NCBI GenBank assembly: GCA_002269645.1
Contig: NIVC01000074.1
Location: forward strand, 62,001-126,000
DNA: 64,000 nucleotides
Direction of reading: 5' to 3'
Source: Macrostomum lignano
Taxonomy: Eukaryota
This document shows positions 4,412 through 50,477 of the stretch, one piece after another. The translations under genes were made by a program, and so were the position numbers. The stretch's first letter is position 1; the number at the start of each line of letters is the position of its first letter. The notes beneath the pieces are model-generated. The model worked only from the letters and a program-made list of their open reading frames with translations, ran no database searches and was not told the origin of the DNA.

Positions 4412-4660
4412 ATGACTTTCATTCTAGTAGCATTCAGCGCTAAAGTATTTTTGACCCTGTGGCTACTGTTTATTGCCCAGAATGTACATCTATACGCGAC
4501 GTCAGGCTCAAATGCTACTTACTTCTTCCCGAGCAACATATCTAAACAGTACGCGCGACTTCATAACAACTTCAGGGAGAGAGCATTGCCAACTGCTAGG
4601 GCGATGAACTTTGTCGTGAGTGACGCATTTTGTTTCTGCCTGCCTGCCTGCCTGCCTGCC

Positions 4661-4714
<54 letters not shown>

Positions 4715-7700
4715 GAGCAACACATCGAATTTCAGACATTGAGCGCCACACTGGAGGCGTTAGCTACGGTCAGGGCTAAAAGGCGCACTGTGAACAAGAA
4801 CTTTAAATCTCTCGGAGAATATAAAGGACTTGATCAAAATGTTTACCTTGGTCCAACAATGGATCCCAAAGAAATAATGAATCAATGGTTCTCAGAGGTT
4901 GACAACTTCGTGGCTAATTTCAGTTTGAGTCCAAGACCAAGATACTGCAGACGGAACTGCTCATGCATGCACTACGCTAACATAATGAGCTCAGAGTTGA
5001 CTCAAATCGGCTGCGGCGTTAGTAGGTGCAAAAACGACACCTTTCTAACGGTGTGTCTCTATTCACACTACTATAACGGGTATGTTGAAAATTTGGCGAG
5101 TGATAACTCATTTTTAAAAATCTACATCCATGTCTAATAATTTTCCCTAAATAAATGTACTGCAGAAACAGATTATCAAACCTGAATTTCAGCCAGGTAA
5201 TCTACAAAACCGGACGGCCCTGTTCGGAGTGCCCGCCTGATAAACCGTTTTGTTTTGACGATCTTTGTGTTAGCAGCGAGTTGGCTCTCTCACCGGAGAC
5301 ATCGAAAACTTACGGCGTGAATATGAAAGAACGATTAGGTAACATTCGTCGGGCTTCATTAATTCTCGTAGCTAACTGTACGCTCCAATGAATTGTATTC
5401 ATATCTGAGTTTCAGAATGCAAATTGACTTGCCAAAACTGCGGTCAGTTGGTGTCAGTGCTGACCGGTCCCAAGCTGAAATGTCAATGCAACTGCCAAGA
5501 CGCCTACGGAACTGGGCACCTGTGCCAAGGTGAGATTTCGATTGGTAGCCATGAAAATATTTGTAGAGAAACTTCAATCCAGCTACTGACAGTCTCCATC
5601 TAGCTACTGAAGTCTCCATCTAGCTACTGACAGTCTCCATCTAGTTACTGACAGTCTCGATCTAGCAACTGACAGTCTCGATCTAGCTACTGACAGTCTC
5701 GATCTAGCTACTGACAGTCTCGATCTAGCTACTGACAGTCTCGATCTAGCTACTGACAGTCTCCATCTAGCTACTGACAGACTCAATCTAGCTACTGACA
5801 GTCTCCATCTAGCTACTGACAGACTCAATCTAGCTACTGACAGTCTCCATCTAGCTACTGACAGTCTCCATCTAGCTACTGACAGTCTCGATCTAGCTAC
5901 TGACAGTCTCCATCTAGCTACTGACAGTCTCGATCTAGCTTCTGACAGTCTCCATCTAGCTACTGACAGTCTCGATCTAGCTACTGACAGTCTCGATCTA
6001 GCTACTGACTGTCTCCATCTAGCTACTGACAGTCTCGATCTAGCTACTGACTGTCTCCATCTAGCTTCTGACAGTCTCCATCTAGCTACTGACAGTCTCC
6101 ATCTAGCTTCTGACAGTCTCAATCTAGCTACTGACAGTCTCCATCTAGCTACTGACAGTCTCTATCTAGCTACTGACAGTCTCCGTCTAGCTTCTGACAG
6201 TCTCAATCTAGCTACTGACAGTCTCCATCTAGCTACTGACAGTCTCCATCTAGCTACTGACAGACTCAATCTAGCTACTGACTGTCTCGATCTAGCTACT
6301 GACAGTCTCCATCTAGCTTCTGACAGTCTCCATCTAGCTTCTGACAGTCTCCATCTAGCTACTGACAGACTCAATCTAGCTACTGACAGTCTCCATCTAG
6401 CTACTGACAGTCTCCATCTAGCTACTGACAGTCTCCATCTAGCTACTGACAGTCTCCATCTAGCTACTGACAGTCTCCATCTAGCTACTGACAGTCTCCA
6501 TCTAGCTACTGACAGTCTCGATCTAGCTACTGACAGTCTCGATCTAGCTACTGACAGTCTCGATCTAGCTACTGACAGTCTCCATCTAGCTTCTGACAGT
6601 CTCCATCTAGCTACTGACAGTCTCCATCTAGCTTCTGACAGTCTCAATCTAGCTACTGACAGTCTCCATCTTGCTACTGACAGTCTCCATCTAGCTACTG
6701 ACCGACTCAATCTAGCTACTGACAGTCTCCATCTAGCTACTGACAGACTCAATCTAGCTACTGACAGTCTCCATCTAGCTACTGACAGACTCAATCTAGC
6801 TACTGACAGTCTCGATCTAGCTACTGACAGACTCAATCTAGCTACTGACAGTCTCGATCTAGCTACTGACAGTCTCCATCTAGCTACTGACAGTCTCTAT
6901 CTAGCTACTGACAGACTCAATCTAGCTACTGACAGTCTCCATTTAGCTACTGACAGTCTCCATCTAGCTACTGACTGTCTCGATCTAGCTACTGACAGTC
7001 TCCATCTAGCTTCTGACAGTCTCCATCTAGCTACTGACAGGTTCGATCTAGCTACTGACAGTCTCCATCTAGCTTCTGACAGTCTCCATCTAGCTACTGA
7101 CAGTCTCCATCTAGCTTCTGACAGTCTCAATCTAGCTACTGACAGTCTCCATCTAGCTACTGACAGTCTCCATCTAGCTACTGACAGTCTCCATCTAGCT
7201 ACTGACAGTCTCCATCTAGCTACTGACAGACTCAATCTAGCTACTGACAGTCTCCATCTAGCTACTGACAGACTCAATCTAGCTACTGACAGCCTCCATC
7301 TAGCTACTGACAGCCTCCATCTAGCTACTGACAGACTCAATCTAGCTACTGACAGTCTCCATCTAGCTACTGACAGTCTCAATCTGAATTTTCACTTTGC
7401 AAATCGCCCACCAGATCGGAATGCCAGATTGCCAAAGCAGAATTGCGAGCCCTGCTCTCCCAGACCGAGTTGTTTAAATGGAGGAAAAGTTGGGCCCAAG
7501 TCGGATTGCACCTGCATCTGTCCCGATGGCTTCTCAGGACAGCGTTGCGAACTCGACGAGAATAGGTGGAATAACAGCATCAGCATGAGCCTTAAAAGTG
7601 TCGAAAATCAGTTCAAGCAAATATCGGCCCCAACAAAAGGCATGGTAATTTTTTTCGTCATAGTTAATTAGTAATTAGTAATTAATAATTATTTGGCTTA

Positions 7701-9006
7701 AAAACTTCATCATATTTCAATTTTTTGGTTTTTATTATCAACGATTACCAATTGCGGAAACATTACGACAAAGGAGCAAAGACTCCAAGGCGTACAGTGT
7801 AGATGCGATGGAGAACGGAGGGATTCTTTATTTGATGTTTTACAGCCACAACGCACAATGTAGGGTGACGCACTGCTGGGTGACAGCACAATGTAGGGTG
7901 ACGCACTGCTGGGTGACAGCACAATGTAGGGTGACGCACTGCTGGGTGACAGCACAATGTAGGGTGACGCACTGCTGGGTGACAGCACAATGTAGGGTGA
8001 CGCACTGCTGGTTGACAGCACAATGTAGGGTGACGCACTGCTGGGTGACAGCACAATGTAGGGTGACGCACTGCTGGGTGACAGCACAATGTAGGGTGAC
8101 GCACTGCTGGTTGACAGCACAATGTAGGGTGACGCACTGCTGGGTGACAGCACAATGTAGTGTGACGCACTGCTGGGTGTCAAAGCTACGCAGTGTCATT
8201 CAGGCCCGCCTTGCCCAGACAACCACAGCCACAGCAGCCGCGGAAGCAGTGCCAGCAGGGCTCGAAGGTTCCATATACGAGCGTTGGAGCGTAGTTCTGT
8301 CTAAACAAAGCTATAAGGCCAGATCAAAACTCGTGTCCAATCAGAATTGTTGAATGGAAAGCCAATCAGAAAACTCGTGTCCAATCAGAATTGTTGAATG
8401 GAAAGCCAATCAGAAAACTCGTGTCCAATCAGAATTGTTGAATGGAAAGCCAATCAGAAAACTCGTGTCCAATCAGAATTGTTGAATGGAAAGCCAATCA
8501 GAAAGCGAGTGGTCTGAAACGTGAGCGCAAAATTGGTAGAGTACAACACAGTTTAGACGCAACGGTCGATAACAAATAACATCCATATGGTTGGAACAAA
8601 GGAGCTTCAAAAACGCCAAATCTATCGTCAAAAATCACTTTACGAAGTCCCAGACATGCTCGACGGGGTTCATCGCTGCATCTGCCTTAATTTTTGTCTT
8701 TACAGTTCCACTCAACAATCTGGCCAATGCTGCAAAGTCAGATTGCCAGCTTCATGACGGCAGAGTGCGAAGTCAATGCGACCCACCTGGCGCTGTGCTG
8801 CTCCCGAGATGCCGCAGATTTCGGCAAGCCGAGAGGAGAGATCAAACCGACTGGAGTGAGACTAAACAGGAGCAGCGTAGAGCGAAACTGTGACGGATCG
8901 CTGCATTTCACTTTTGGTGTAGTCGCTACTGACAGCAGTAGTAGCTTATGCGAATTATCGTTGACTGCTGCCGCTAAGGCTGCCGGAGCAGGTGCATCAT
9001 CGGGAA
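4412..9006 (+). CDS. CAP-A: secreted CAP/SCP (venom allergen-like) protein + Cys hinge + 2 EGF-like + conserved unknown domain; exons 4412-4615, 4736-5079, 5193-5338, 5416-5529, 7415-7644, 8706-9006; terminal exon not resolved
   Basis: Hydrophobic N-terminus; HNNFRE..PTARAMNFV; QWFSE; HYANIMSSELTQIGCGVSRC..FLTVCLY; YKTGRPCSECP..C..DLC; EGF-like CQCNCQDAYGTGHLC and CLNGG..CTCICPDGFSGQRCE. All junctions GT-AG with phases 0,2,1,1,0,1. Confidence 0.85.
4635..4713. repeat. (CTGC)n/(CTGT)n microsatellite in CAP-A intron 1
   Basis: Directly visible. Confidence 0.95.
5576..7385. repeat. Intronic minisatellite, 21-bp unit CTAGCTACTGACAGTCTCCAT
   Basis: About 1.8 kb tandem array in CAP-A intron 4; source of the spurious RLSVARW ORFs. 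Confidence 0.97.
7850..8180. repeat. Intronic minisatellite, 33-bp unit CACAATGTAGGGTGACGCACTGCTGGGTGACAG
   Basis: About 10 tandem copies in CAP-A intron 5. Confidence 0.95.
8327..8504. repeat. 44-bp tandem repeat (4 copies), each with two CCAATCAG motifs
   Basis: AAACTCGTGTCCAATCAGAATTGTTGAATGGAAAGCCAATCAGA, period 44. Confidence 0.9.
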
Positions 9007-9067
9007 GTGAGTTGTAATTTTTTTAAATTTGAAATTTTTGAAAATTTTGAAAGAAAATGATTTTAGT

Positions 9068-9270
9068 ATGAAGTGTCGGAGATAGAAGTGTCGGAGATAT
9101 GAAGAGTCGGAGATATGAAGTGTCGGAGATATGAAATGTCGGAGATATGAATTGTCGGAGATATGAAGTGTCGGAGATATGAAGTGTCGGAGATATGAAG
9201 TGTCGGAGATTTGAAGTGTCGGAGATGTGAAGTGTCGGATATATGAAGTGTCGGAGATATGAAGTGTCAG
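9068..9270. repeat. 16-bp minisatellite GAAGTGTCGGAGATAT
   Basis: About 12 copies starting ~60 bp after the CAP-A exon 6 donor. Confidence 0.95.
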
Positions 9271-9534: not shown

Positions 9535-10560
9535 TATCAAACGAATTTGCATTCGGAGAAGGTGCAGTTGTTAAAGCTAAACTTCGCCGTCGCCAGATTT
9601 TCCTGATTAACGCCGGTGATTTGCGTGTTTGACACCACATTGACATTCAGCTCACTGGCCCCAGAATCGCTTGGTCCTACGTGTCCAGCCTGGTCACATT
9701 TAACTTCTTCTTCTTTAGTTTGCAGTGCCAATGCCGACGTCACAGCATAGCTGCTCGCTTGCAGAGATCGGTCCCAACGTTTTGTAAGTTGACACCGCGA
9801 TTCTGCTTCGTTGAATATGTGGGACTTCCGTTCGCAGAGTTTGCCAGTGGCTGTGGAAATAAATGGTTATCCTTGGTTTCAACTGGTAGAAGGTCTAGAT
9901 ACCGTCGTACCTTTTCAGTATCGTAAATCCTTGCCTGCTTGTTGTCGGGTTTTGCTTTACTTCTCACTGGATCCGCGGACTTATTCTTAGACGGAAGAGA
10001 CATCTCGTCGTGTCAGATGCTGCAGGTGCTCTTGGCCTCTTTCGCCCAAGCAATAAAGGACATAAAACAGAAATTTGTCCTGCTCTGCCACTGCCGTACC
10101 TCCCTCAAAGTAGCATGCGAGCTTTTGCATATCACCAGTCTCCAATCTCGATGTTTATGGCCTCCAATTTCGGCCATAGACAACTGCTTCACCAATGTTA
10201 TCTGCGGTACTGGCCATAGACATGAAGTGTACGCATCGATATTTTATTTCCCGCCTTTTCACCCATAGACAATTCAATCAATGCAGCTATACTATGAAGC
10301 ACGAATTCAAGTTAATGACCAAGGGCACGAGTGCGCGTAGTCATACGTTATATTAACCTACCATTAACTAAAAACTCATGCTTTTTACAGCAACGGCAAA
10401 GTACATTCCGCTCTCCTACCTGCTCCCCGCGGTGAAGAAGCGACATAGAGGACTCAATGGTCAGTTGCTTTCCCATAAGCGAGGCGTTGTCATTCAGAGC
10501 ATTGATCCAGCCAAAGAGCCTGACGTGCACGATTTCAATAGGAACAGCTCGAAGACTGCA
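9535..10560 (-). mobile_element. Degenerate Crypton-like (DUF3504 / tyrosine-recombinase-type) transposon remnant
   Basis: Frameshifted minus-strand fragments PLCRFF, GGHKHRDWRL, RRYLDLLPVETKDNHLFPQPL..YSTKQNRGVNLQNVGTDLCKRA and QAGH resemble, in the correct order, DUF3504-family motifs recalled from memory (F..R..G..Y; GLRG..EHR; YL..LP..FY.RP..WYS..P.G.N.L..M..LC..AG; GH). Confidence 0.5.
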
Positions 10561-11113
10561 GGAGACACTGGCGGGCAGTGCTTGAAGCCGGTGCAAAGTC
10601 GCAGTCAGGCATTGACAGCACCTGGCACTGTCATCGCGTGTACACTTGCATGCACCCTCTCTGCATCATTTTTTCTAAATTTTGTTCGCATCTTTTTTTA
10701 GTGCATCAGAAGACTATGTAGGCGGCTCTACTACGTAGTGAGAAACTTTTGCATGTGCGCAAAGCAGAATTGAGTAAAAATTTCTCGGCAAAATATACGA
10801 GCGTGCATCTACGCCACTAAACGCTGTTATGAAATACAGTTCCTGGCCTACTGAACTGATATAGTTAGGGCAATTTATTATTTGGGGATTGTGTGCACAA
10901 ACATGGGCCTAGGGGAGGGCCTAGGGGAGGACTTTAAATTAGTCAGAATTAGTCAGTCAGAAATTAGTCAGCTCGTAAGTTTCATCAATTCTAGGAAAGC
11001 CGTAAAATTTGACAATTCTTCTCATTTTAACACAAGCAGCAATAGAAAGTGTATTAAATTGTACGCTGTTTATTCTGTTTCAGTAGGAAATAAAATTCGA
11101 CATCAGAGTCGCA

Positions 11114-14100
11114 TCATTTTGTTAGCAATACGGACAGCAATGCTGTAATAAAATTAATAAATGGTGCAACCTTTAGCCTGGAAGAGTACGACTTCTCAGT
11201 AATATCACTTTTCCTATCAATACAGTCTGTAATGTTAGAATTGTCAACGTCATTGCGACTAGATCTAGCGGCATAAGACGTCCATATCCATCCGTAGTCC
11301 TTGCCAAAATCTGCTCGAGATTCCAAGAAATCAATGGCTCCAATGGCAACGCCTTGAGGCAAAGATTCGTCAATTTCCCGCTTGTACTGCTGTACAGCCA
11401 GTCGGATAACCGCAGAGCGGACGAACTTTGCTGGTTGCGCTGGCGTGGAAAATTGTTTACGAATTATGGATATTATGGATTTTATATTGATTGTATTTTC
11501 GGCAGTTCAGCTAAATAGCTAAGCAATGTGAGTGGCGATTTAGCAACGTGTGAAGAAACCACGAGAATGCAAAATTTCAGTCACCAGTAGTCGTGGCATT
11601 AGGGCGCATTCAGGAGCTCACATTTTTCTTTAACTGAGCTTTAGCACCGGGGGCTTTAGCACCGGGGGCTTTAGTACCGGGGGCTTTAGTACCGGGGCTT
11701 TAGCACCGGGGGCTTTAGCACCGGGGGCTTTAGCACCGGGGGCTTTAGCACCGGGGGCTTTAGCACCGGGGGCTTTAGCACCGGGGGCTTTAGCACCGGG
11801 GGCTTTAGCACCGGGGGCTTTAGCACCGGAGGCTTTAGAACCAAGGGCTTTAGCAGTTGCCACTGTATCTGTTTCACTACCTCAGCAAGTAAAAAGCAGA
11901 GCAGCACTAATCACTCACCTCGATCAAGCAGCAGTTTACGCTTCTGTACTTTTAATTTTCCCACCGAGCACAGGGTGCTGCTACCCGCCGGCACGCCAAT
12001 GTAGATCAGCAGCTGCAGACCGCCGCCAGCAACCTGGTTGATGGTGCCCTGCAAATAATTGACGTCTTCCGGGCCAACATAAGATGCAGAACCAACCTCG
12101 ACCGTGTAGCTCCTGCCTGAGCAGCACAACTCATAATTGTAATGGTTTCGGCAGAACTTTGTAACGGCTTCGGCAACCGCTGAGCGGAACTTTAGATTCC
12201 AAATCTCCATGTGGAACTGTAGGTTGAAAATGATATGGGCTTACAGGCTTTCAGTTCTGGATGCATGTAAGTAGTCAGTTCCAAAAAATATTATGTTTCA
12301 CTTAGGTATACTGGCGCCACACTGTTTATACTAGCGCCACACTGTTTATAATAGCGCCACACTGTTTATACTGGCGCCACACTGTTTATACTGGCTCCAC
12401 ACTGTTTATACTAGCGCCACACTGTTCATACTAGCGCCACACTGTTTATACTGGCGCCACACTGTTTATACTGGCGCCAAACTGTTTACACTGGCGCCAC
12501 ACTGTTTATACTGGCGCCACACTGTTTATACTGGCGCCAAACTGTTTATACTGGCGCCAAACTGTTTGTACTGGCGCCACACTGTTTACACTGGCGCCAC
12601 ACTGTTTATACTGGCGCCACACTGTTTACACTGGCGCCACACTGTTTATACTGGCGCCACACTGTTCATACTGGCGCCACACTGTTTATACTAGCGCCAC
12701 ACTGTTTATACTGGCTCCACACTGTTTATACTGGCGCCACACTGTTTATAATAGCGCCACACTGTTTATATTGGCGCCACACTGTTTATACTGGCGCCAC
12801 ACTGTTGATACTAGCGCCACACTGTTTATACTAGCGCCACACTGTTTATACTGGCGCCACACTGTTTACACTGGCGCCACAAAACTTACCTGAGCTTTAG
12901 CGATCGGTGGCAAGACAACCAGGGGCCCCGATCTGAACCAGGCCGCCGACACAAATGTCAGTTTCACACTATTAACATGCAGAATAGCCGAGATTTCGCA
13001 GTATTTACCAACAAATTCGAGCGGACATAAACAGCCGCAGTGCACTTTTGCCGGGAATACAAATGCCAAGTAGTTGACGCCACTGTTCAGACACTTGGAA
13101 GACTTCATTGACTCGCACTCTTTGCAGGCTTCGATGGACGAGCCCTCTGCGGGTTAGCGTAAATTCAGGCCTTAATAGCTACACAGTGCTCACACAGGGT
13201 GTACAGTGCTCACACAGGGTGTTCAGTGCTCACACAGGGTGTTCAGTGTTTAAACAGGGTGTACAGTGCTCACACAGGGTGTACAGTGCTCACACAGGGT
13301 GTGAAGTGCTCACACAGGGTGTAAAGTGCTCACACAGGGTGTTCAGTGTCTAAACAGGGTATACAGTGCTCACACAGGGTGTAAAGTGCCCACACAGGGT
13401 GTTCAGTGTCTAAACAGGGTATACAGTGCTCACACAGGGTGTACAGTGCTCACACAGGGTGTACAGTGCTCACACAGGGTGTTCAGTGCTCACACAGGGT
13501 GTACAGTGCTCACACAGGGTGTACAGCACTCGACCAGGATGTACAATAACCTAATGTAACGTGTACGCAAACCCTACTGTATTAAAATTTTCTGTTAATT
13601 TTCCATTTTTTATAATTCATAATTGCACTGCGTTGAACCACCTCTATCAATAACCAAGGCGCTAAAAAATTAGAAAACTTACTCTCGCAGTATTTTCCAC
13701 TGTTTGAAGGATGGCAAAGACACTCGCATTTGTGAACTGCAGTCGAAAAAGTACTGATAGAAGAACTCATCACGGTGGCTGAAAAATCTGTCCTTAATGC
13801 ACAATTCCTGCAATCGATTCTGCAAGCTGCAACAGGTTAATTACGAGTTATACATGTACATGTATTGCATGATGGGCGGAACGCACTGAGTGCAAGGTAG
13901 ATAAGGGAAATGACAGAAATGAGTGCCAGGTAGATAAGGGAAAGGACAGAACTGAGTGCCGGGTAGATAAGGGAAAGGACAGAACTGAGTGCCAGGTAGA
14001 TAAGGGAAAGGACAGAAATGAGTGCCAGGTAGATAAGGGAAAGGACAGAAATGAGTGCCAGGTAGATAAGGGAAAGGACAGAACTGAGTGCCAGGTAGAT

Positions 14101-16035: not shown

Positions 16036-16178
16036 TTATTGTCTGTTGAATCATTGAACGAAACTATTTTCTTTACGGTTGACCAGAGAATATCGAGCGC
16101 TCGATATTCCCTGCGGTTGACTTAAGCAACACCCAAATTGAACTATTGCAGTTCGTTTAAAATCTAAATCTATAATTC

Positions 16179-19525: not shown

Positions 19526-19533
19526 TAAAAAGA

Positions 19534-35200: not shown

Positions 35201-38200
35201 ACCGGACGTCGTAGCCGCGAAGTCTCTCGACCCATCGATGAATGCGAAGAGGCCTGTGCCCCATGCCTTTCGAGTCGAGCAGAGTTGTCAGGGCCTTGTG
35301 GTCGGTGCGCAGCGTTACTCGTCTGCCGTATAGATAGTAGTGCCAGCGTTCGATGCTCCATACACAGGCCAGGGCTTCTCGCTCTCCGGCTGAGTATCGC
35401 TTTTCCGCTGGGCTGAGTGCTCTCGATGCGAACGCGATTGGCACCTCTTTTTCGTTTTGTACTTGGCTGAGCACTGCCCCCAGTCCGTCTAGACTTGCAT
35501 CGCAGGTGACGTACGTCTCAGCTTGGCAGTCAAAATGAGCTAACACTGGGCTGCTGGTTACGGCTGACTTGAGTGTACGGAAGGCTGTACGTTCCCGCTC
35601 ACCCCAGTGCCAGTCCGCGTCCTTTTTGAGCAGTTGTCTCAGAGGCTCGGCAATTGCTGAGTAATGTGGTATGAACTTGTGCAAAAAGTTCACTGCCCCG
35701 AGAAACGATTGAATTTGCGCGACCGTTGATGGCTCAGGAATTCTTAGAATTGCGTCGACGTTGCACTTGGTCGGTTTGATGCCGTCTGCAGAGATGACCA
35801 ATCCGAAGAAATCCACGCTCGCCTGCCGGAATTTGCACTTCTCTCGATTGAGTGTGAAGCCTTCGCGATGAATCCGCCCTAGGACTTCTCGGAGGTTCTT
35901 GTCGTGCTCAGTCTCGTCCTTGCCGTGCACCAGGATGTCGTCCACGATGTTGATGGCGCCAGGAGCTCCTCGAAGCACCGTCTGCAGGGCTCGCTGGAAG
36001 GCAGCTCCGGAGCTAGATAGCCCGAATGGCACCACGGTGAACTGGTACAGGCCGGCATCGGTGATGAAGCACGTCAGTCCTCGAGAGTCTGGATGCAGCG
36101 GAATCTGCTGGTAGCCTTGACGCAGGTCCAGCTTGCTGAAGCACTTCGAGCCGTTGATGCTGGCCGATAGGTCCTCGATTGACGGTACCGGATAGCGGTC
36201 CGCGATCACCGCCTTGTTGACCTGCCGCAGATCCACGCAGAGACGAACCTTGTTGGACTCCTTCTTGCGCGTCACGACAACGTTGCTAACCCACTCGGAC
36301 GCGTCGACCTTCTCAATGATGCCCTGTTGCTCCATCCGGCTGATCTCTGACGTCACTTCGTCCTTCAGGCCGATCGGCAGCTTCCGCATTGGCTGAGACA
36401 CTGGCTTGACCGAGGCGTCGATCTTTGTCCGGTGAATGAAGCTCTTGGACCGGCCCAGACCGTCGAAGATTCCGGGGAAGTCGCGCTCGATCGTAGTCTC
36501 GCTGATGCTCATCACTCTGTTGTCACCTTGGAAGATTTTGAATCCGAGGGCCTGAAACAGGTCGCGGCCCAGGATGTTCGCTCCTTTGTCGGCGACGTAG
36601 AATGTGGCTTCTGTCCTGATGCCGTTGAACGTCACTGGAAGCTCGACCTTGCCGATGGTCTTGATCGCAGATCCGCCGTATGCCTCCAGTTTTGTGCTCG
36701 TCGGAAGCAGCGGGTGCCTAGCGAAGGACTTCTTGAACGTCTCCATGTTGAGCAACGAAACGGCAGCACCGCAGTCGATTTGCAGTCGAATCAGCTGTCC
36801 GCCCAGACGGCATTCGCAGAATAAGCTGTCTGTGCTCTTGTTGTTCACGGCCAGGACCGTCAGACTGGACTCTGCAGGCTCTTTGGTGTCGATCGCAGAG
36901 ACCGCTTTCATGCGGCACATTTTCGCGAAATGGTTCGTCTTGCCGCATCGTCTGCATTTCTGGCCCATCGCCTTGCATTCGCCCTTGTGTCCGTGGTTGC
37001 CTCCGCATCGAGTGCACTTTGGACCTGCTGCTGCGGTCTTCTCATGGCGAGCAGCTGGCTTCGGCTTCTTGCTCAGCGCCTTCACGTGGAGCTCTGGGCC
37101 GCTGACCTGCTTGGCATCTCTGATGGCTGCTTCGATTCGCTCAGCCTTCTTGATGGCGTCATCTAGCGTCAGATCGTCCTCCTCCATCAGGAGTCTTTCC
37201 CTAATGCGAGGTACGCAGGTTTTCTCCACAAGTTGGTCTCGAATTATTTCGTCGTGAAAGGTGCCAAATTTGCAGTTTGTTGCCAGTTCTCTCAGGGCCA
37301 TCACGTAGTCTCCGATGCTCTCGCCGTCGTGCTGGGCTCGCTGCCGAAAGGCGAAGCGCTCTGCTATGACGCTTCTCGACGAGCTGAAAATCGCCTTCAG
37401 TGCCGTTTTGGTCTCCTGAAGCGACTTGCTTGCATCGACGTTTGCAGCTCGGCGGCGTCCTTCCTCACCAAGCAGATGCAGGAGGATCGCCTTTTTCCGA
37501 CTCTCTGATGCCTCTTCGAGAGCTCCAGCTACCAGGAAGTTCTCAAATGACTTGATCCACCTTGCCCATGGCACAGGAGGTTCGCCTGGTACTGGTTGAA
37601 ACTCCGCTGGGTACGGGAGTCCGCTCGTCGCCATTTGTTGTGTTCTAGTTGATTGATTAAATTCAATTCAGTTGGAGACACTTGAGTCTCGCTCAATATA
37701 TTTATACTCATGTGCACGTTGAAAACAGTGTTACGCAATCGAAACAACGATACCATGATTGAACGCACGATGCATATAAGGTAATTGAACAATTCTAGCC
37801 TCAAAGTTAGTTAGTTACAACACCTAGGCCCGATGCACAGTCACTACAGATCAGTGTCTAATCAGTGCTTGGATCAGTGTCTAATGAGTGCTTGGATCAG
37901 TGTCTAATCAGTGCTTGGATCAGTGTTTAATCAGTGCTTGGATCAGTGTCTAATCAGTGCTTGGACCAGTGTCTAATCAGTGCTTGGATCAGTGTCTAAT
38001 CAGTGCTTGGATCAGTGTCTAATCAGTGCTTGGATCAGTGTCTAATCAGTGCTTGGATCAGTGTCTAATCAGTGCTTGGATCAGTGTTTAATCAGTGCTT
38101 GGATCAGTGTCTAATCAGTGCTTGGATCAGTGTCTAATCAGTGCTTGAAACAGTGTCTAATCAGTGCTTGGATCAGTGTCTAATCAGTGCTTGGATCAGT

Positions 38201-41200
38201 GTCTAATCAGTGCTTGGATCAGTGTCTAATCAGTGCTTGGATCAGTGTCTAATCAGTGCTTGGATCAGTGTCTAATCAGTGCTTGGACCAGTGTCTAATC
38301 AGTGCTTGGATCAGTGTCTAATCAGTGCTTGGATCAGTGTCTCATCAGTGCTTGGACCAGTGTCTAATCAGTGCTTGGATCAGTGTCTCATCAGTGCTTG
38401 GATCAGTGTCTAATCAATGCTTGGATCAGTGTCTCATCAGTGCTTGGACCAGTGTCTAATCAGTGCTTGGACCAGTGTCTAATCAGTGCTTGAACCAGTG
38501 TCTAATCAGTGCTTGGATCAGTGTCTAATCAGTGCTTGGACCAGTGTCTAATCAGTGCTTGGATCAGTGTCTAATCAGTGCTTGGACCAGTGTCTAATCA
38601 GTGCTTGGATCAGTGTCTAATCTGCCTCCAACTAACCTACTTAGATATGGAGAGAACACCTGGCCCAATACGCGGAGAGGGAGGCAAACGAACTGTGCTA
38701 CATTGTGCACCAGACTGACACGGTCTGGTATATAAAAATGGGCGACTCTTGGCTAAGCTACCAGACAACAGAGAACGTGCTGCCCACCGCCTGGCAGATT
38801 GTGGACGCTTGGCACTCTACCGGACGAAGCTACCGTAGTACGGGCGCCTGCTCAGGCGAAAACACGAACTGCCAACCATATCTGCAGATCATGAGCGACA
38901 AATTGGATAGTCTCGGCTGCGCTTATTATCTTTGTCATGGAGTGCACACTTTTGTGTGCTATTATTCGCATAAGTTAGCTGGGGAGAAGTACTTCTTGAT
39001 TGTGGCTTGGCCTCAGTGTTTTTGGTTGGCAATGTTGATATTGGATTAGGATGATTTAAGGTTGGGTATAAGAAGTTAGGGGTTTTCGTAGGTGGTTGAC
39101 GTGTCTTAGGGGTGAGGGTTGGCGTGTTTTATAGGGGTTGGCGTGTTTTATAGGGGTTGGCGTCTTTTATGGGTTTGGCGTGTTTTTTGGGGGCGGGGGT
39201 CGTCGTGTTTTATACGAGCTGGTGCTGATGTGTTTCATAAGGTTTGGCGTGTTGTGTGGCTTTGGTGTGTTACGCCGGGGTTTTGTGTGTCTTATGGGAT
39301 TTGGTACGGGTGGTGTTTTTTATCGGCGTTGGCATGTTTTATAGGTTGTGTTTTACCGTGAGTTGACGTATTTTTTGGGGCAGGCGGCGTTTATTCATAG
39401 GTATTGTGAATTTACTATTTTTATATTTTTGATGAGTGATTCATGCAATTTGTTCATATTTACAAACTTTAATTACTTTAATTACTTTAGGGCCGCAGTG
39501 CATGGCAGTCGGGTCTACGCCGTAGGCGAGCCGTGCAGCGCCTGTCCCAACAGCTTGCCACTCTGCTTGAACAATCTGTGCATCGATAAAATGATAGTCA
39601 GAGACCCGACGGTACCGGTTTACAAAGGATCCGACTCTAGCCAGAGACCATGTAAGAATTTGTTTGCTTATCTTGTGATATAGTCCATCCGGAATCGCCA
39701 AGAAAACATGCTCAACACCACATAAAACACGCCAACCAACACGCGCACGCCAAACCCTCCCCCAACACGTGCAATTATGTCACCCCAGCTCCTCCCACAC
39801 GCGCACGCCAACCTTTCCCCCAACACGCGCACGCCAACCCCTCCCCCAACACGTGCAATTAAGTCACCCCAGCATGCCAACCCCTCCCCCAACATGTGCA
39901 AGTCACCCTTCTCCAACACGCGCACGACAATCCCTCCTCCAACACGCACACGCCAACCCCTCCCCGAACACGCGCAAGTCGACGCTTTCACTAAACAAAC
40001 ACACCAAAATTACCTAAAGCACCTAATTCGAAGTATAAAAATCGCCATAGTAGCGAAGGGCTTATTGGGTTAGCATAGTTTAAGGCTTGGTATGATTTTT
40101 AAAAGACGGTGTTTCATGGGTGGTTGGCGTTTATTATGGTTTTTGGTGTGCTTTATGGTGAGTTGTTGTGTTTTATTTATGGGGTTTAGCGTGTTGTATG
40201 GGTTTGGTGTTTGGGGGGTTGGTGTGTTGTATCGTGATTGGCGTGTTTCATATGGACGTTTGGCGTTTTACAGTGCGTTGACGTATTGTATGATGGGGCA
40301 GACGGCGTGTGTTGCTGGCCGAGCAACTGAGGATGAGGATCTGAGAGGCATGTACATGTACGTACCAGTTTCTCTAACATGTATATTCCATGCGTAACCG
40401 GCAGTCTGCACAAGAGACTGCGAAACCTGTGAGCAGCGTCTCATCGGTCAGTGTCGTAGATGCGACTGCAGCAACGGCGGCACCCGTCGGCCGGAGGCGA
40501 CGCCATCGAATTGCAGGTGCACCTGTCCGATCGGATACTTCGGCCGGCAGTGCCAGGTGACTTTGGCCCGGTATAAAAACAGCGTTGCGCTGCGACTGGG
40601 GGTGCGCGGGCCTGGCAAGCTGTCCATGTCGCTGGTGAGTTTACTTGGGCTTATTTTCTATTATTTTCTATTATTTTCTATTATTTTCTATTTTTTTATT
40701 TATTAGTTCGAGTGAGCCCATAATTTAGCATGCATAATGCATAGCCACCGTTTAGCTGGTACATTTAACTAATTCGGTTTGGTACCTCAAGATCTGAGAA
40801 ACTGACGATCTGAAAGGGGGAAGTGGCCCAGCAACTGAGGATGGAGTTGGGAGGCTGGCCCAGCAACGAGGATGGAGTTGGGAGGCTGGCCCAGCAACTG
40901 ACACTTTGGGAGGCTGGCCCAGTAACTAACACTCTGGGAGGCTGGCCCAGCAACTGAGGATGGAGTTGGGAGGCTGGCCCAGCAACTGACACTCTGGGAG
41001 GCTGGCCCAGTAACCAACACTCTGGGAGGCTGGCCTAGCAACTAAGGATCTGGGAAGGCCCAGCAACTGAGGATCTGGGAGGCTGACGATTGCCCAGTCT
41101 TATATATATGAATGTATATAAGTAGCAAATATTTTAATATTTATTTTAATCTCGTATGAGTTTCGAGTCTATACATAAAGAACTGCATGGCTTCTAACTC

Positions 41201-42614
41201 TCACGCCTGCCTACACAGTTTCACTCGGTGCTGTGGAGAAGTCTTCAGACCCTTCTATCGTTGTCGGTGAACAGCTTCTGCAGAAGCCACGCGAGTCGCT
41301 ACAAAATGTGCTGCCCAGACAAGAGTTACAGTTCCTTAGTATCCACCTCGACCGCTAAGTTTGTAGATACAAACTGGTTCATACAGGAACCGGATCTGCT
41401 TCAGCAGAATCAGAACGGCGAACTTATGGTGTACGTCCGGGCGGCTATGGTCAGTGCAATACAGGACCCTGTGCTCTGCTACCATTCGGATAAGCTGAAC
41501 CCGAAGACCAATCCGCCAAGCTGTGAGGAGTTGAAAGTTAAATTTCTGCTATTTTCTTGATTGTTGATTTAAAGATCAATGAGTATTAAGCGGCTTACTT
41601 AGAAGTCAAGGGGCATGGCGGCTCATTTAGAGATTAACGGGTATGTGGCCGGTTAATTAAAGGATCAAGAAGAGGATTACCTGTTGAAGACATTACACAG
41701 TGACTAGAATCGCAATTCGACGGAGAGGCGACCTACTGTTGAGTCACAAGCGTACATGTATTACGTGAGTTGTAGATTTGCAAGAGTCGCGAAATGTTTG
41801 TTTAAGAGTCGTCGTGTTGTATTGGCGCATAACTTACTTTCTGCTAACTCAAGCAGACGAAACGGAATTGTTATAGATGCGAAATGTGATTCTACAATAA
41901 TGCATACAGTGACGCAGATGCGCTTTAGAAGCAACTCCTGTGATCCTACAGTGACTCCAGTCTCCAGCACGCCATAGATACGACTCCAAGCCCATAGTCA
42001 CTTGGGTCGCCCCAGTCGCAGACAATAAAACGCCTCAAATTTACTCTTAGGCGACACTTTGACGACTAACCCCGCGACTTGTACCGTGATGCCCTCGTAT
42101 CTTGTCGTTTTAGAGTCGTCTAGAGACACATCTTTACCATTTTACGTATGTCATGTTACCTGGAACGACTCTGGGGCGACGCAAGTGACTCCAGGACGCA
42201 ATTTTGGCTAGGTACCGTTTTCATCGGATCGGGGTCCGCATTCTTATACATGAACTCTCGTTTTAAAAGAACACCGGGTTACCTTAATATAAAAAAACAA
42301 TTTCTTTAATTAAGTAAAACCTTGTAAAAATTGCATTCTAAATAAAGTTGCACAACCCATACCGTACTACAGCGGACAAAGACCCGGAGCACATTCCTCC
42401 CTATCTGATTCAAGAGGCCATTCGGAGTAGTAAAAGCTGGATCAATGAGCAGCTGTCTGCGTGTTGTGAGAACGCAGTTATAAAAGAATTTCATGTACTG
42501 GCAATCGTAACCGCTGGAGGGCCGAGAACTACAGGTGGCAACACAGGTACCGGATGGATGCGATCCATGGCCATGGCTGTAGTAACAGGATTAGTCACAT
42601 TTCTTTATATGTAA
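20242..42614 (+). CDS. CAP-C: 6-exon CAP/SCP + hinge + 1 EGF-like + conserved unknown domain + GPI/TM tail; exons 20242-20412, 38645-38973, 39491-39651, 40405-40634, 41219-41522, 42373-42614
   Basis: Signal peptide; HNRFRELAYPTASRMLYL|IWREHLAQYAE; DAWHS; YLQIMSDKLDSLGCAYYLC..FVCYY; YAVGEPCSACP..CLNNLC; CSNGG..CRCTCPIGYFGRQC; FHSVLW..SFCRSHASRYKMCC; tail SMAMAVVTGLVTFLYM*. Junctions GT-AG, phases 0,2,1,0,1. The start could be Met 20257. Confidence 0.82.
20430..33525. repeat. 23-bp satellite (ATCAGTGTCTA + ATCAGTGCTTGG), left arm, in CAP-C intron 1
   Basis: About 13.1 kb tandem array; monomer is a dimer of related 11- and 12-bp subunits. Confidence 0.99.
33697..34500 (-). CDS. Integrase catalytic core and C-terminus, separated from Pol by a 1-nt frameshift at ~34496-34498
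   Basis: PKMLISDNGPQFVS..YPQGNGGVERFNRSLK..YRTSQHALTGLTPAELMIGRKLR; adding one G to the run at 34496-34498 gives LFGRWGVPKMLISDNG. Confidence 0.9.
   Translation of the reverse strand: MGVPKMLISDNGPQFVSDEFEEFLRAEGIKHSRVSRYYPQGNGGVERFNRSLKEGLAANLRAGAKFEDAIDLVLKTYRTSQHALTGLTPAELMIGRKLRSGLQLLRPTPVQQRDDSDLRDAIIERQAKNADYTNKRRRARDSTLQAGDWVWRQTPHRAHKLATRLKEPLKIASKAGRNTFVLSDGTKWQASRLVKCNSPPADNGAADQEDDWFDLPLPPAPPPRTGEPPPPPELRRSTRARRQPARYPLPEGGECSDCASGLGVVTN
34479..37634 (-). CDS. Gag-Pol polyprotein (gag with two CCHC knuckles, aspartic protease, RT, RNase H, integrase N-terminal part)
   Basis: CTRCGGNH..C and CRRCGKTNH..C; LQIDCGAAVS; LCVDLRQVN, KLDLRQGYQQ, PFGLSSSG, IVDDILVHG; TCDAS..GLGAVL, YSAGEREALA, TDHKAL; H..H..C..C zinc finger; IDIFG. 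Confidence 0.95.
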   Translation of the reverse strand: MATSGLPYPAEFQPVPGEPPVPWARWIKSFENFLVAGALEEASESRKKAILLHLLGEEGRRRAANVDASKSLQETKTALKAIFSSSRSVIAERFAFRQRAQHDGESIGDYVMALRELATNCKFGTFHDEIIRDQLVEKTCVPRIRERLLMEEDDLTLDDAIKKAERIEAAIRDAKQVSGPELHVKALSKKPKPAARHEKTAAAGPKCTRCGGNHGHKGECKAMGQKCRRCGKTNHFAKMCRMKAVSAIDTKEPAESSLTVLAVNNKSTDSLFCECRLGGQLIRLQIDCGAAVSLLNMETFKKSFARHPLLPTSTKLEAYGGSAIKTIGKVELPVTFNGIRTEATFYVADKGANILGRDLFQALGFKIFQGDNRVMSISETTIERDFPGIFDGLGRSKSFIHRTKIDASVKPVSQPMRKLPIGLKDEVTSEISRMEQQGIIEKVDASEWVSNVVVTRKKESNKVRLCVDLRQVNKAVIADRYPVPSIEDLSASINGSKCFSKLDLRQGYQQIPLHPDSRGLTCFITDAGLYQFTVVPFGLSSSGAAFQRALQTVLRGAPGAINIVDDILVHGKDETEHDKNLREVLGRIHREGFTLNREKCKFRQASVDFFGLVISADGIKPTKCNVDAILRIPEPSTVAQIQSFLGAVNFLHKFIPHYSAIAEPLRQLLKKDADWHWGERERTAFRTLKSAVTSSPVLAHFDCQAETYVTCDASLDGLGAVLSQVQNEKEVPIAFASRALSPAEKRYSAGEREALACVWSIERWHYYLYGRRVTLRTDHKALTTLLDSKGMGHRPLRIHRWVERLRGYDVRFEHIPGADNKCADMLSRWATTERVPAEETDEEGYVYAVVDSKTTLTADALATATKEDEVLQAVLQYISGGWPTKVDSSLKPYFNVRDELFCWNNGQCLGRGERAIIPTSLRLQVIEEAHEGHPGVVRSKQRCRDTVWFPGIDRQVEDYVKNCTACTLAEKSGKPQQTIVTPIEWPDGPWDKVEIDIFGEVAAAPRHQRFLLVIHDLYSKWPEIAAMETVTSANIIKTLRKLFGRWESRRC
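37849..38622. repeat. 23-bp satellite, right arm
   Basis: Same unit; resumes in register after the TSD and ends just before the branch-point-like CTAAC and acceptor of CAP-C exon 2. Confidence 0.99.
39100..40300. repeat. Degenerate GT-rich / CA-rich repeats in alternating orientation in CAP-C introns 2 and 3
   Basis: GGTTGGCGTGTTTTAT-type units at ~39100-39400 and ~40100-40290; reverse-complement units (ATAAAACACGCCAACC, CCAACACGCGCACG) at ~39710-40010. Confidence 0.75.
40824..41090. repeat. 28-32-bp minisatellite GGGAGGCTGGCCCAGCAACTGA.. (CAP-C intron 4)
   Basis: About 8 variable copies. Confidence 0.9.
41996..42190. mobile_element. Possible small MITE in CAP-C intron 5
   Basis: AGTCACTTGGGTCGCCCCAG versus CTGGGGCGACGCAAGTGACT, 20-bp inverted repeat with 1 mismatch. 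Confidence 0.4.

Positions 42615-50445: not shown

Positions 50446-50477
<32 letters not shown>

What the first reader, a model, noticed from the sequence alone, without database searches (positions are those of the whole stretch)
4412..42614. Cluster of three divergent CAP/SCP-EGF-(unknown domain) genes, two with GPI-type tails, sharing one exon plan
Seen in sequence: three hand-assembled genes (+,-,+) share architecture and intron phases (0,2,1,[1],0,1), and CAP-A and CAP-B both have a 344-nt exon 2, yet the proteins are only distantly similar. CAP-B and CAP-C end in a hydrophobic tail without a cytoplasmic extension. Established: most CAP/SCP-TAPS proteins are single-domain or carry a CRISP, C-type lectin or LCCL extension. 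Inference: a lineage-specific family of surface-anchored CAP-EGF receptors or adhesins that may be undescribed. The automatic ORF track misses it because the exons are scattered among repeats.
Basis: partly seen in the sequence, partly recalled or inferred. Interest (0 to 1): 0.78.

Follow-up and report, generated by a model that had tools for sequence, protein, structure and literature searches.

The report
Membrane-tethered CAP–EGF gene cluster, flatworm
Three neighbouring genes of the flatworm Macrostomum lignano encode very divergent surface-tethered CAP-family proteins with an EGF stalk and an uncatalogued membrane-adjacent domain; the genes are real and already annotated as hypothetical proteins, so this is a modestly new branch of a well-known protein superfamily, not a new kind of system.

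Summary
The window is Macrostomum lignano contig NIVC01000074.1. It carries three tandem genes (+,-,+) with one exon plan: intron phases 0,2,1,(1),0,1, all GT-AG, and a 344-nt exon 2 in A and B. The proteins are only about 25% identical. All three are already in GenBank as hypothetical proteins from an RNA-seq-guided annotation (PAA91755-57), and my models reproduce A and B exactly.

- Gene A also ends in a hydrophobic tail; its last exon (10391-10701) was missed.
- The family is not flatworm-only. A search of 1.84 billion proteins found one non-flatworm relative, in the nemertean Tubulanus.
- CAP-hinge-EGF-EGF is also the N-terminal layout of vertebrate CLEC18.

The 'unknown' C-terminal domain has no Pfam or PDB sequence match. 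Two AlphaFold models give a beta-alpha-beta-beta-alpha-beta fold whose best PDB matches are SEA-like membrane-adjacent domains (ACE2 neck, PCDH15 MAD12, Nup54), at weak E-values.

The likely product is a GPI-anchored glycoprotein that holds a CAP head with a degenerate metal site on an EGF/SEA-like stalk. Its function is untested. I rate it a new variant of a known kind, of moderate interest.

The parts
4412..4615 (+). Gene A exon 1: start codon, signal peptide, first CAP helix with HNNFR (CAP3 motif). Ends in phase 0.
   Evidence: junction NFV|TLSA is in PAA91755.1
4736..5079 (+). Gene A exon 2 (344 nt): rest of the CAP domain. Ends in phase 2.
   Evidence: Pfam CAP E=2.3e-16
5193..5338 (+). 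Gene A exon 3: CRISP/GLIPR1-type 4-Cys hinge (CSECPPDKPFCFDDLC). Ends in phase 1. An in-frame alternative acceptor lies at 5166.
5416..5529 (+). Gene A exon 4: EGF-like module 1. It is a symmetric phase 1-1 cassette and is skipped in UniProt model A0A1I8HB64.
7415..7644 (+). Gene A exon 5 (230 nt): EGF-like module 2 (CICPDGFSGQRC) plus the first strand of the C-terminal domain. Ends in phase 0.
8706..9006 (+). Gene A exon 6: core of the SEA-like domain (FH..IW helix, C...CC, beta hairpin, LC). Ends in phase 1.
10391..10701 (+).
15871..16035 (-). Gene B exon 1: start codon, signal peptide, HNRLR. Ends in phase 0.
15184..15527 (-). Gene B exon 2 (344 nt): CAP domain. Ends in phase 2.
   Evidence: Pfam CAP E=5.2e-12
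14224..14360 (-). Gene B exon 3: hinge (CSDCPAKFSACFGGLC). Ends in phase 1.
13683..13826 (-). Gene B exon 4: EGF-like module 1 (CLCHPSNSGKYC), a phase 1-1 cassette. It is absent from UniProt model A0A1I8I925.
12890..13146 (-). Gene B exon 5: EGF-like module 2 (CLCPLEFVGKYC) plus the first strand of the C-terminal domain. Ends in phase 0.
11919..12216 (-). Gene B exon 6: core of the SEA-like domain. Ends in phase 1.
11114..11439 (-). Gene B exon 7: end of the domain, a linker, the hydrophobic tail (VAPFINFITALLSVLLTK) and the stop codon.
20242..20412 (+). Gene C exon 1: start codon, signal peptide, HNRFR. Ends in phase 0.
38645..38973 (+). Gene C exon 2 (329 nt): CAP domain. Ends in phase 2.
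39491..39651 (+). Gene C exon 3: hinge (CSACPNSLPLCLNNLC). Ends in phase 1. The annotated acceptor is 39491; an in-frame alternative lies at 39509.
40405..40634 (+). Gene C exon 4 (230 nt): the single EGF-like module (CTCPIGYFGRQC) plus the first strand of the C-terminal domain. Ends in phase 0.
41219..41522 (+). Gene C exon 5: core of the SEA-like domain. Ends in phase 1. It is skipped in PAA91757.1 and partly used in A0A1I8I3K6 and A0A1I8GRF6, and it is intact in the second genomic copy.
42373..42614 (+). Gene C exon 6: end of the domain (with ACC), a Gly/Thr linker, the hydrophobic tail (SMAMAVVTGLVTFLYM) and the stop codon.
20470..38622 (.). Contents of intron 1 of gene C: a 23-bp satellite (20470-33525 and 37849-38622, about 600 copies) interrupted by a 4.3-kb LTR retrotransposon (33526-37848). 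This is why exon 1 lies 18 kb from exon 2.
   Evidence: the same intron is 768 bp with 30 satellite copies in the other genomic copy

Best explanation
This is a tandem cluster of three old, strongly diverged paralogues of a CAP (SCP/TAPS) superfamily branch.

Each gene encodes, in order:
- a signal peptide;
- a CAP domain;
- a CRISP/GLIPR1-type 4-Cys hinge;
- one (C) or two (A, B) EGF-like modules;
- a ~150-180-residue cysteine-marked domain with no Pfam family, which most likely adopts a SEA-like (ferredoxin-like, 'membrane-adjacent domain') fold;
- a short polar linker;
- a moderately hydrophobic C-terminal tail with nothing after it.

Inferred mechanism: the proteins enter the secretory pathway and the tail is exchanged for a GPI anchor. 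The mature glycoprotein then stands on the outer face of the plasma membrane, with the SEA-like domain next to the membrane, the hinge and EGF modules as a disulfide-rigid stalk, and the CAP domain at the tip.

In these three copies the canonical His/Glu/Glu/His cavity tetrad is reduced to 1-2 residues. It is complete in another M. lignano paralogue and in the nemertean relative. The head is therefore more likely a binding or recognition surface (lipid/sterol or protein ligand) than a metal-dependent site.

Shown: gene structures, domain order, homology, and the absence of a cytoplasmic tail. Inferred: GPI processing, the SEA-like fold, and any ligand or biological role.
For: Gene models:
- All junctions are GT-AG with conserved phases.
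- B is identical to PAA91756.1 and A to PAA91755.1.
- The annotation is RNA-seq based.

CAP and hinge:
- Pfam CAP is above the gathering score in all three.
- The hinge aligns to GLIPR1 3q2r through ...C-x2-CP...C...LC.

EGF: EGF signature patterns are present in each protein and in fewer than 1% of shuffles.

C-terminal domain:
- It is conserved among A, B, C, further M. lignano paralogues and Tubulanus XP_074644855.1 (W, C, CC, LC, A, CC columns).
- Pairwise BLAST of B against Tubulanus gives 1e-10 over 140 aa.
- Two independent AF2 models (B: pLDDT 50, pTM 0.52; Tubulanus: pLDDT 77, pTM 0.77) show beta-alpha-beta-beta-alpha-beta.
- Both models retrieve the same set of PDB folds: only the ACE2 constructs long enough to include the collectrin-like neck, PCDH15 MAD12, CDH23 MAD28 and the Nup54 ferredoxin-like domain.

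Anchoring:
- Hydropathy shows exactly two hydrophobic segments, the N-terminal signal and the extreme C-terminus (maximum KD about 2.0).
- The Tubulanus homologue instead has a strong TM helix (KD 4.05) plus a 43-aa cytoplasmic tail.

Tetrad status comes from alignment A8.
Against: - No GPI or signal-peptide predictor was available, so anchoring rests on hydropathy and inspection of small residues upstream of the tail.
- The Foldseek E-values are weak (4e-3 to 7e-2, none at or below 1e-3) and TM-scores are 0.35-0.58.
- Ferredoxin-like folds are common.
- There is no Pfam SEA hit, and the G|SVVV autoproteolysis motif is absent.
- The B-domain model is of low confidence.
- For gene C, the only GenBank transcript skips exon 5 and would give a truncated 308-aa secreted CAP-EGF protein.
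- No expression site, ligand or phenotype is known. The gene identifiers occur in no searched paper or supplement.
Confidence: 0.68

Rival explanations
1. The C-terminal hydrophobic stretch is a plain transmembrane anchor: a type I protein with essentially no cytoplasmic tail, not a GPI-attachment signal.
For: - A's tail is 21-24 residues long and ends ...FVRIFF, long enough to span a membrane.
- The nemertean relative is a true TM protein.
- No GPI predictor was run.
Against: - The tails are only moderately hydrophobic (maximum 15-residue KD about 2.0, against 4.05 for the Tubulanus TM helix).
- They are 15-17 residues long in B and C and sit at the very C-terminus.
- They are preceded by small residues and a short polar spacer (…KSYSSRLK-, …GNTGTGWMR-, …SQALTAPG-), which is the usual layout of GPI signals (inspection).
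Confidence: 0.2
2. The C-terminal domain is a new fold or family unrelated to SEA/MAD domains, and the structural matches only reflect the commonness of ferredoxin-like alpha/beta sandwiches.
For: - There is no Pfam hit at E<=10 and no PDB sequence hit.
- No Foldseek E-value is <=1e-3, and unrelated ferredoxin-like proteins such as MoaC appear among the hits.
- The domain carries a six-cysteine pattern (C, CC, C, CC) that, from my own knowledge, classical SEA domains lack.
- The autoproteolysis motif is absent.
Against: - Two independent queries (B and Tubulanus) put the same membrane-adjacent domains at the top: the ACE2 neck, PCDH15 MAD12, Nup54 and CDH23 MAD28, with probabilities of 0.9-1.0.
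- The position, directly before the membrane anchor and directly after EGF modules, is the typical context of SEA-like domains.
Confidence: 0.25
3. The cluster consists of decaying duplicates. At least gene C, and perhaps all three, are on the way to being pseudogenes, and the loss of CAP motifs reflects relaxed constraint.
For: - The CAP tetrad is reduced to 1-2 of 4 residues.
- The annotated C transcript skips exon 5 and frameshifts.
- Introns are flooded with satellites and a retrotransposon.
- Differences between the two C copies are 5 synonymous to 5 non-synonymous.
Against: - All 20 exons keep open frames, canonical splice sites and 19 invariant cysteines despite about 75% sequence divergence, which requires long-term purifying selection on the scaffold.
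- Transcripts exist.
- The full 478-codon C reading frame is intact in a second genomic copy.
- A CAP protein lacking the tetrad can be functional: SmVAL4 binds cholesterol (PMC4118828).
Confidence: 0.08
4. The functional products are soluble. The anchor or stalk serves only for transient tethering, and the CAP-EGF ectodomain is shed as a secreted effector, like the secreted group 1 VALs or secreted CLEC18.
For: - Most characterised CAP proteins act as secreted proteins (abstracts).
- SEA-like domains are frequent sites of cleavage (PMC11527881).
- The exon-5-skipping isoform of C would be secreted.
Against: - The SEA autoproteolysis motif is not conserved.
- All three paralogues and the nemertean relative retain a membrane anchor, which argues that tethering matters.
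Confidence: 0.2

Closest known systems
Vertebrate CLEC18 (CLEC18A/B/C)
   Same: It has the same N-terminal order: signal peptide, CAP/SCP domain, a cysteine-containing linker, an EGF domain, then an EGF-like domain. In human CLEC18A these are CAP 45-190, EGF 232-261 and EGF-like 264-292 (PMC11103991).
   Different: [quoted passage not shown] The flatworm proteins have no CTLD (no Pfam Lectin_C hit), and instead carry a SEA-like domain plus a membrane anchor. I could not test direct sequence relatedness or shared intron positions, because no CLEC18 sequence was on hand.
GLIPR1 / GLIPR1L1 / PI16 (membrane-bound mammalian CAP proteins)
   Same: GLIPR1 (PDB 3q2r) is the best solved-structure match for A's CAP domain plus hinge (E=9.5e-11), and the alignment runs through the 4-Cys hinge. 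From my own knowledge, GLIPR1 is a type I membrane protein and PI16 and GLIPR1L1 are GPI-anchored, so a membrane-tethered CAP head is a known arrangement.
   Different: The mammalian proteins have no EGF modules and no SEA-like domain between CAP and the anchor. PI16 instead has a long low-complexity stalk. The tetrad is degenerate in the flatworm copies.
Tubulanus polymorphus LOC141901485 (XP_074644854-57, uncharacterised)
   Same: It was the only protein outside Macrostomum, among 1.84 billion representatives, that matched the C-terminal domain profile (E=4.4e-4). It shares CAP, hinge-like cysteines, EGF modules and the same domain with the W/C/CC/LC/CC columns. This makes it a true family relative.
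   Different: It is longer (670-694 aa). It has an extra cysteine-rich insert and a Thr-rich stretch, three EGF signatures, a full CAP tetrad, and a strong TM helix with a 43-aa cytoplasmic tail in place of a GPI-type tail.
SEA-like / membrane-adjacent domains (ACE2-collectrin neck, PCDH15 MAD12, CDH23 MAD28, Nup54, EpCAM/TROP2)
   Same: The predicted beta-alpha-beta-beta-alpha-beta sandwich sits immediately before the membrane anchor, and these domains are the top Foldseek hits for both models. [quoted passage not shown]
   Different: There is no detectable sequence similarity, no G|SVVV cleavage motif, and a family-specific set of up to six cysteines. The structural scores are weak.
Platyhelminth venom-allergen-like (VAL) proteins
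   Same: They belong to the same superfamily in the same phylum. M. lignano VALs were already noted to form species-specific clades (PMC3435950), and SmVAL4 likewise lacks the CAP tetrad yet binds sterol (PMC4118828).
   Different: The 2012 survey of platyhelminth VALs (PMC3435950) never mentions EGF, GPI or transmembrane segments (0 occurrences).

Membership tests
CAP / SCP-TAPS superfamily | Match to Pfam PF00188 above its gathering score (21.1 bits) | tested here: met
   A scores 61.1 bits (2.3e-16), B 47.1 bits (5.2e-12) and C 38 bits (3.4e-9).
CAP / SCP-TAPS superfamily | CAP3 motif HNxxR | tested here: met
   HNNFR in A, HNRLR in B, HNRFR in C. Motif definition from PMC4118828.
CAP / SCP-TAPS superfamily | Cavity tetrad His/Glu/Glu/His and CAP4 G[EQ]N[ILV] | tested here: not met
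   Alignment A8 against GLIPR1 gives A = K,Q,E,H (2/4), B = V,F,E,N (1/4) and C = H,E,T,P (2/4). There is no CAP4 match in A-C. Paralogue A0A1I8HYU9 and the Tubulanus protein have 4/4 and GENI/GENL. The fold family is not in doubt, because SmVAL4 shows the same loss.
CAP / SCP-TAPS superfamily | PROSITE CRISP family signatures 1 and 2 (patterns written from memory) | tested here: not met
   No match in A, B, C, nor in the paralogues or the Tubulanus protein.
CRISP/GLIPR1-type hinge | Four cysteines, C-x2-C...C-x4-C, directly after the CAP domain | tested here: met
   CSECPPDKPFCFDDLC, CSDCPAKFSACFGGLC and CSACPNSLPLCLNNLC. The region aligns to the GLIPR1 hinge.
EGF-like domain | Six-cysteine module with the C-x-C-x5-G-x2-C signature | tested here: met
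   The signature is present once in A, twice in B and once in C. It occurs in 7-14 of 2000 shuffles.
EGF-like domain | Match to a Pfam EGF model above its cut-off | tested here: inconclusive
   Only sub-threshold hits were found (EGF_C8A_B_C6 at 0.003-2.5; EGF_laminin at 1.2).
SEA / SEA-like (MAD) domain | Beta-alpha-beta-beta-alpha-beta ferredoxin-like sandwich next to the membrane anchor | tested here: inconclusive
   The AF2 topology fits. Foldseek top hits are the ACE2 neck, PCDH15 MAD12, Nup54 and CDH23 MAD28, but E is 4e-3 to 7e-2 and TM is 0.35-0.58.
SEA / SEA-like (MAD) domain | Sequence match to the Pfam SEA family | tested here: not met
   No Pfam family matches the last ~200 residues of A, B or C even at E<=10. 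There is no PDB sequence hit either.
SEA / SEA-like (MAD) domain | G|S-V-V-V autoproteolysis motif in the beta2-beta3 turn | tested here: not met
   The pattern is absent. The turn reads DGSLHF (A), GGGLQL (B), NGELMV (C) and GNGLKI (Tubulanus).
GPI-anchored proteins | N-terminal signal peptide plus a C-terminal hydrophobic stretch with no cytoplasmic extension, preceded by small residues and a polar spacer | tested here: met
   Hydropathy shows only those two hydrophobic segments. The tails are 15-24 aa with maximum KD of about 2.0.
GPI-anchored proteins | Positive call by a trained predictor (NetGPI, PredGPI, big-PI), or PI-PLC release | not testable with these tools
   No such predictor or experiment was available.
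CLEC18 family | C-terminal C-type lectin-like domain after CAP-EGF-EGF-like | tested here: not met
   There is no Lectin_C or other Pfam hit in the C-terminal region. These proteins are therefore not CLEC18 members, although the N-terminal layout is the same.

The most novel reading that the evidence does not exclude
The cysteine-marked C-terminal module is a previously uncatalogued SEA-like domain family. It defines an old spiralian branch of the CAP superfamily, shared by flatworms and nemerteans: CAP-hinge-EGF(n)-SEA-like-membrane anchor. In Macrostomum this branch expanded into at least five paralogues. In this cluster it differs from the nemertean relative by having a GPI-type tail in place of a transmembrane helix, and it has lost the CAP metal-binding tetrad. 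This would be a new CAP subfamily alongside CRISP, GLIPR, PI15/16, CRISPLD and CLEC18, possibly used for fast-evolving cell-surface recognition.
Probability: 0.5. Interest if true: 0.45.

Novelty: new variant of a known kind. Interest (0 to 1): 0.33.

Why it matters
CAP/SCP-TAPS proteins are abundant in flatworms, where the parasite forms are vaccine candidates, yet their modes of action remain unclear.

A branch in which the CAP head is fixed to the cell surface on an EGF/SEA-like stalk, in a free-living flatworm amenable to transgenesis, gives a tractable setting to ask what a tethered CAP domain binds. The tetrad-complete and tetrad-degenerate paralogues offer a natural comparison.

The finding also adds an uncatalogued juxtamembrane domain shared by flatworms and a nemertean.

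It does not reveal a new mechanism, and the genes are already in public annotation.

Tried and rejected
1. Word-indexed protein searches with C, with the A/B/C alignment and with a six-sequence domain alignment returned only M. lignano proteins. The third search added nothing new.
2. Spliced C sequences could not be handed to the structure or HMM tools, because no annotated protein contains those junctions. I used exon-contiguous fragments instead. MAFFT misplaced one fragment, so I dropped that piece.
3. Pfam at E<=10 and a profile search of PDB sequences gave nothing for the C-terminal domain.
4. The first AF2 model (B domain, 4-row alignment) had pLDDT 50, so I use it only as corroboration.
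5. The gene identifiers Mlig024536, Mlig003617, Mlig016489 and Mlig005532 occur in no full text and in none of three papers' supplements. I therefore obtained no expression data.
6. I first modelled A with the upstream exon-3 acceptor (5166) to reach 558 aa. The annotated 558 aa instead come from 9 residues of 5' read-through plus the acceptor at 5193.
7. For A's tail I first considered exons near 9303-9560. I rejected these because of in-frame stops and phase mismatch, in favour of 10391-10701.
8. tblastn found no further family members elsewhere in the window.
9. Pei & Grishin 2017 (PMC5326570) is not held in the library. I cite it only through PMC11527881.

Full report
**Origin and context.** The window is Macrostomum lignano (free-living flatworm), assembly Mlig_3_7, contig NIVC01000074.1. 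Window coordinate + 62000 equals the record coordinate. The region is rich in minisatellites (30 TRF rows). This fits the published description of the genome, in which more than half is repetitive and 15% is simple or tandem repeats (PMC5730564).

**Check of the observation.** I rebuilt the three genes from the sequence.
- Every intron is GT-AG.
- Intron phases are 0,2,1,1,0,1 in A and B and 0,2,1,0,1 in C, which lacks the separate first EGF exon.
- Exon 2 is 344 nt in both A and B and 329 nt in C.
- A's exon 5 and C's exon 4 are both 230 nt.
- The proteins are 25-26% identical with 60 invariant columns, 19 of them Cys.

**Independent support for the models.**
- My 556-aa B protein is exactly GenBank PAA91756.1 (BOX15_Mlig003617g3).
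- A equals PAA91755.1 (BOX15_Mlig024536g3), which adds 9 residues of 5' read-through.
- C exons 1-4 equal PAA91757.1 (BOX15_Mlig016489g1).
- The C exon 5/6 junction and the tail are in UniProt A0A1I8GRF6.
- The GenBank models come from a genome-guided RNA-seq assembly (StringTie plus TACO).

**Two corrections to the observation.**
- Gene A has a seventh exon (10391-10701) that encodes a hydrophobic tail, so all three proteins end this way.
- No annotated transcript contains the whole of C exon 5. The GenBank isoform skips it and frameshifts to a 308-aa product. The exon is still in phase and homologous to the family (tblastn hits from B, A0A1I8HYU9 and the nemertean protein). It is also intact in a second genomic copy on contig NIVC01000660.1, where all splice sites and the 478-codon frame are kept.

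**Domain anatomy.**
- Exon 1 encodes the signal peptide and the first CAP helix (HNxxR).
- Exon 2 encodes the rest of the CAP domain. Pfam PF00188 gives 2.3e-16, 5.2e-12 and 3.4e-9 for A, B and C.
- Exon 3 encodes a four-cysteine hinge. It aligns to the hinge of GLIPR1 (3q2r, E=9.5e-11), the closest solved structure.
- Next come two EGF-like modules in A and B and one in C. Pfam EGF models stay below threshold. The classical EGF signatures are present, and rare in shuffles.
- The first EGF exon is a symmetric phase 1-1 cassette. It is absent from alternative UniProt models of A and B.

**The CAP cavity tetrad.** The alignment to GLIPR1 shows that the His/Glu/Glu/His cavity tetrad is reduced to 2, 1 and 2 residues in A, B and C. 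A fourth M. lignano paralogue (A0A1I8HYU9) and the nemertean relative keep all four. Loss of the tetrad does not preclude function: SmVAL4 has one tetrad residue and binds cholesterol (PMC4118828).

**The 'unknown' domain: sequence evidence.** The last ~200 residues match no Pfam family even at E<=10 and no PDB sequence. A profile of this region was searched with HMMER against 1.84 billion representative proteins and found only seven proteins. Six are M. lignano models: isoforms of A, B and C and two further paralogues, A0A1I8HYU9 and A0A1I8FKH7. One is from another phylum, XP_074644855.1 of the nemertean Tubulanus polymorphus. The nemertean protein aligns over the whole domain with the conserved W, C, CC, L-C, A and CC columns. 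Pairwise BLAST against B gives 1e-10 over 140 residues. Its architecture is signal peptide, CAP, hinge-like cysteines, EGF, a cysteine-rich insert, a Thr-rich stretch, EGF, EGF, the same domain, a strong TM helix and a 43-residue cytoplasmic tail.

**The 'unknown' domain: structural evidence.**
- AlphaFold2 on B's domain (4-row alignment) gave pLDDT 50 and pTM 0.52.
- AlphaFold2 on the nemertean domain with a 7-row alignment gave pLDDT 77 and pTM 0.77.
- Both models show beta-alpha-beta-beta-alpha-beta.
- Foldseek against the PDB returned the same set at the top for both models. The set is ACE2 (only constructs of 698-751 residues, which include the collectrin-like neck), protocadherin-15 MAD12, cadherin-23 MAD28 and the ferredoxin-like domain of Nup54. 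TROP-2 appeared only for the B model, at E about 2.
- These are the membrane-adjacent domains that the literature treats as divergent SEA domains (PMC11527881, citing Pei & Grishin 2017).
- The scores are weak: E is 4e-3 to 7e-2, and TM is 0.35-0.40 normalised to the query and up to 0.58 normalised to the target.
- The SEA self-cleavage motif is not present.

I therefore call the domain 'probably SEA-like', not a proven SEA domain.

**Membrane attachment.** Hydropathy finds only two hydrophobic segments in each protein: the N-terminal signal and the extreme C-terminus. The tails are 15-24 residues long and moderately hydrophobic (maximum KD about 2.0, against 4.05 for the nemertean TM helix). 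Nothing follows them, and small residues with a short polar spacer precede them. That is the layout of a GPI-attachment signal. No trained predictor was available, so this step is inferred.

**Most likely working model.** The proteins are probably GPI-anchored surface glycoproteins. A has 9 and B has 7 N-x-S/T sites, and C has none. The SEA-like domain would sit on the membrane, the hinge and EGF modules would form a rigid stalk, and the CAP domain would be presented distally as a binding surface. The deep divergence of tandem paralogues on a conserved cysteine scaffold, together with the loss of metal-binding residues, points to recognition or ligand binding, not to a conserved catalytic or metal-dependent role. 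The ligand, tissue and phenotype are unknown. The rival explanations are a plain TM anchor, a non-SEA fold, decaying duplicates, and shed soluble effectors.

**Comparison with known families.**
- CAP followed by EGF and EGF-like modules is the N-terminal plan of vertebrate CLEC18, which ends in a C-type lectin domain and is secreted. The flatworm proteins lack that domain and are not CLEC18 members.
- Membrane-bound CAP proteins are also known. From my own knowledge, GLIPR1 is a TM protein, and PI16, GLIPR1L1 and yeast Pry3 are GPI-anchored. Eimeria SAGs are membrane-anchored CAP-superfamily surface antigens (PMC7979774; title, abstract and term counts).
- What I could not find described anywhere is the combination CAP-hinge-EGF-SEA-like-anchor, or the C-terminal domain itself.
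- The 2012 survey of platyhelminth VALs does not mention EGF, GPI or transmembrane segments.
- No searched paper or supplement contains the gene identifiers.

**Verdict.** The finding is real and correctly located. Its interpretation is partly right: surface-tethered CAP-EGF proteins, not described in the literature searched. It is overstated in three respects: the genes are annotated, the family reaches at least the nemerteans, and CAP-EGF has a vertebrate precedent. I rate it a new variant of a known kind, of moderate interest.

Noticed in passing
window 20470-33525 and 37849-38622 (intron 1 of gene C); L002 10228-10917: A 23-bp satellite (AATCAGTGCTTGGATCAGTGTCT) fills about 13.8 kb of intron 1 here (about 600 copies). 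The other assembled copy of the same gene, on contig NIVC01000660.1, has only 30 copies, and its intron is 768 bp. This is a roughly 20-fold difference in array length between gene copies that are 97-100% identical in their exons. It could be real expansion or assembly collapse.
   Followed up: partly
window 33526-37848 (minus strand): A 4.3-kb LTR retrotransposon is inserted inside the satellite. Its two 213-nt LTRs are 100% identical (33526-33738 and 37636-37848), which suggests a very recent insertion. One ORF of 1051 aa (34479-37634) has zinc knuckle, RT, RNase H and integrase zinc-binding domains. The integrase core lies in a second, overlapping ORF (33697-34683), so pol is interrupted by a frame change near 34480-34680.
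   Followed up: partly
window 5577-7385, 7853-8179, 9067-9273, 11638-11855, 12307-12881, 13183-13545, 13887-14173, 14458-15128, 40824-41085: Nearly every intron of genes A, B and C holds its own distinct minisatellite (periods 15-33 bp, up to 86 copies). Several give long spurious ORFs in the mechanical ORF list.
   Followed up: no
M. lignano contigs NIVC01000074.1, NIVC01000660.1 and a 1.5-Mb contig: The A-B(-C) cluster is present three times in the assembly with consecutive protein accessions (PAA91755-57, PAA78916-18, PAA93681-82). This is consistent with the known large-scale duplication in this genome.
   Followed up: partly
window 19-1115 (+): A GC-rich (59%) stretch upstream of gene A encodes thrombospondin type 1 repeats (Pfam TSP1_ADAMTS, 3.7e-17 and 5e-12) in two overlapping frames. 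These are probably the last exons of an ADAMTS-like gene that runs off the window.
   Followed up: partly
window 46266-51963 (-): The downstream neighbour is annotated as a 755-aa protein with no Pfam hit on record. ORF pieces nevertheless match the myotubularin-like phosphatase domain (3.8e-14 and 8.6e-9). The stretch aligned to the catalytic region reads VESTDRDWNC, which by eye lacks the CX5R motif, so this may be an inactive myotubularin-related protein.
   Followed up: partly
window 18363-18737 (-) and 18961-19347 (-): Between genes B and C lie two mobile-element remnants. One is an ORF with a GIY-YIG nuclease domain (6.2e-7). The other is a 128-aa ORF with a transposase-type helix-turn-helix (HTH_38, 9.9e-9) fused to what looks like the C-terminal end of a Tc1/mariner-type transposase.
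   Followed up: partly
window 63447-63986 (-): The last ORF of the window matches the C-terminal part of an amiloride-sensitive sodium channel (Pfam ASC, 8.9e-18). This is a DEG/ENaC channel gene running off the window.
   Followed up: no
proteins A, C and relatives (alignment behaviour): Within the C-terminal domain, the hairpin of the first half (...NGELMVYVRAAMVSAIQDP in C) resembles the strand region of the second half in A (...NGQLLSHKRGVVIQSIDP). MAFFT aligned the two to each other. The domain may have arisen by duplication of a helix-hairpin unit.
   Followed up: no
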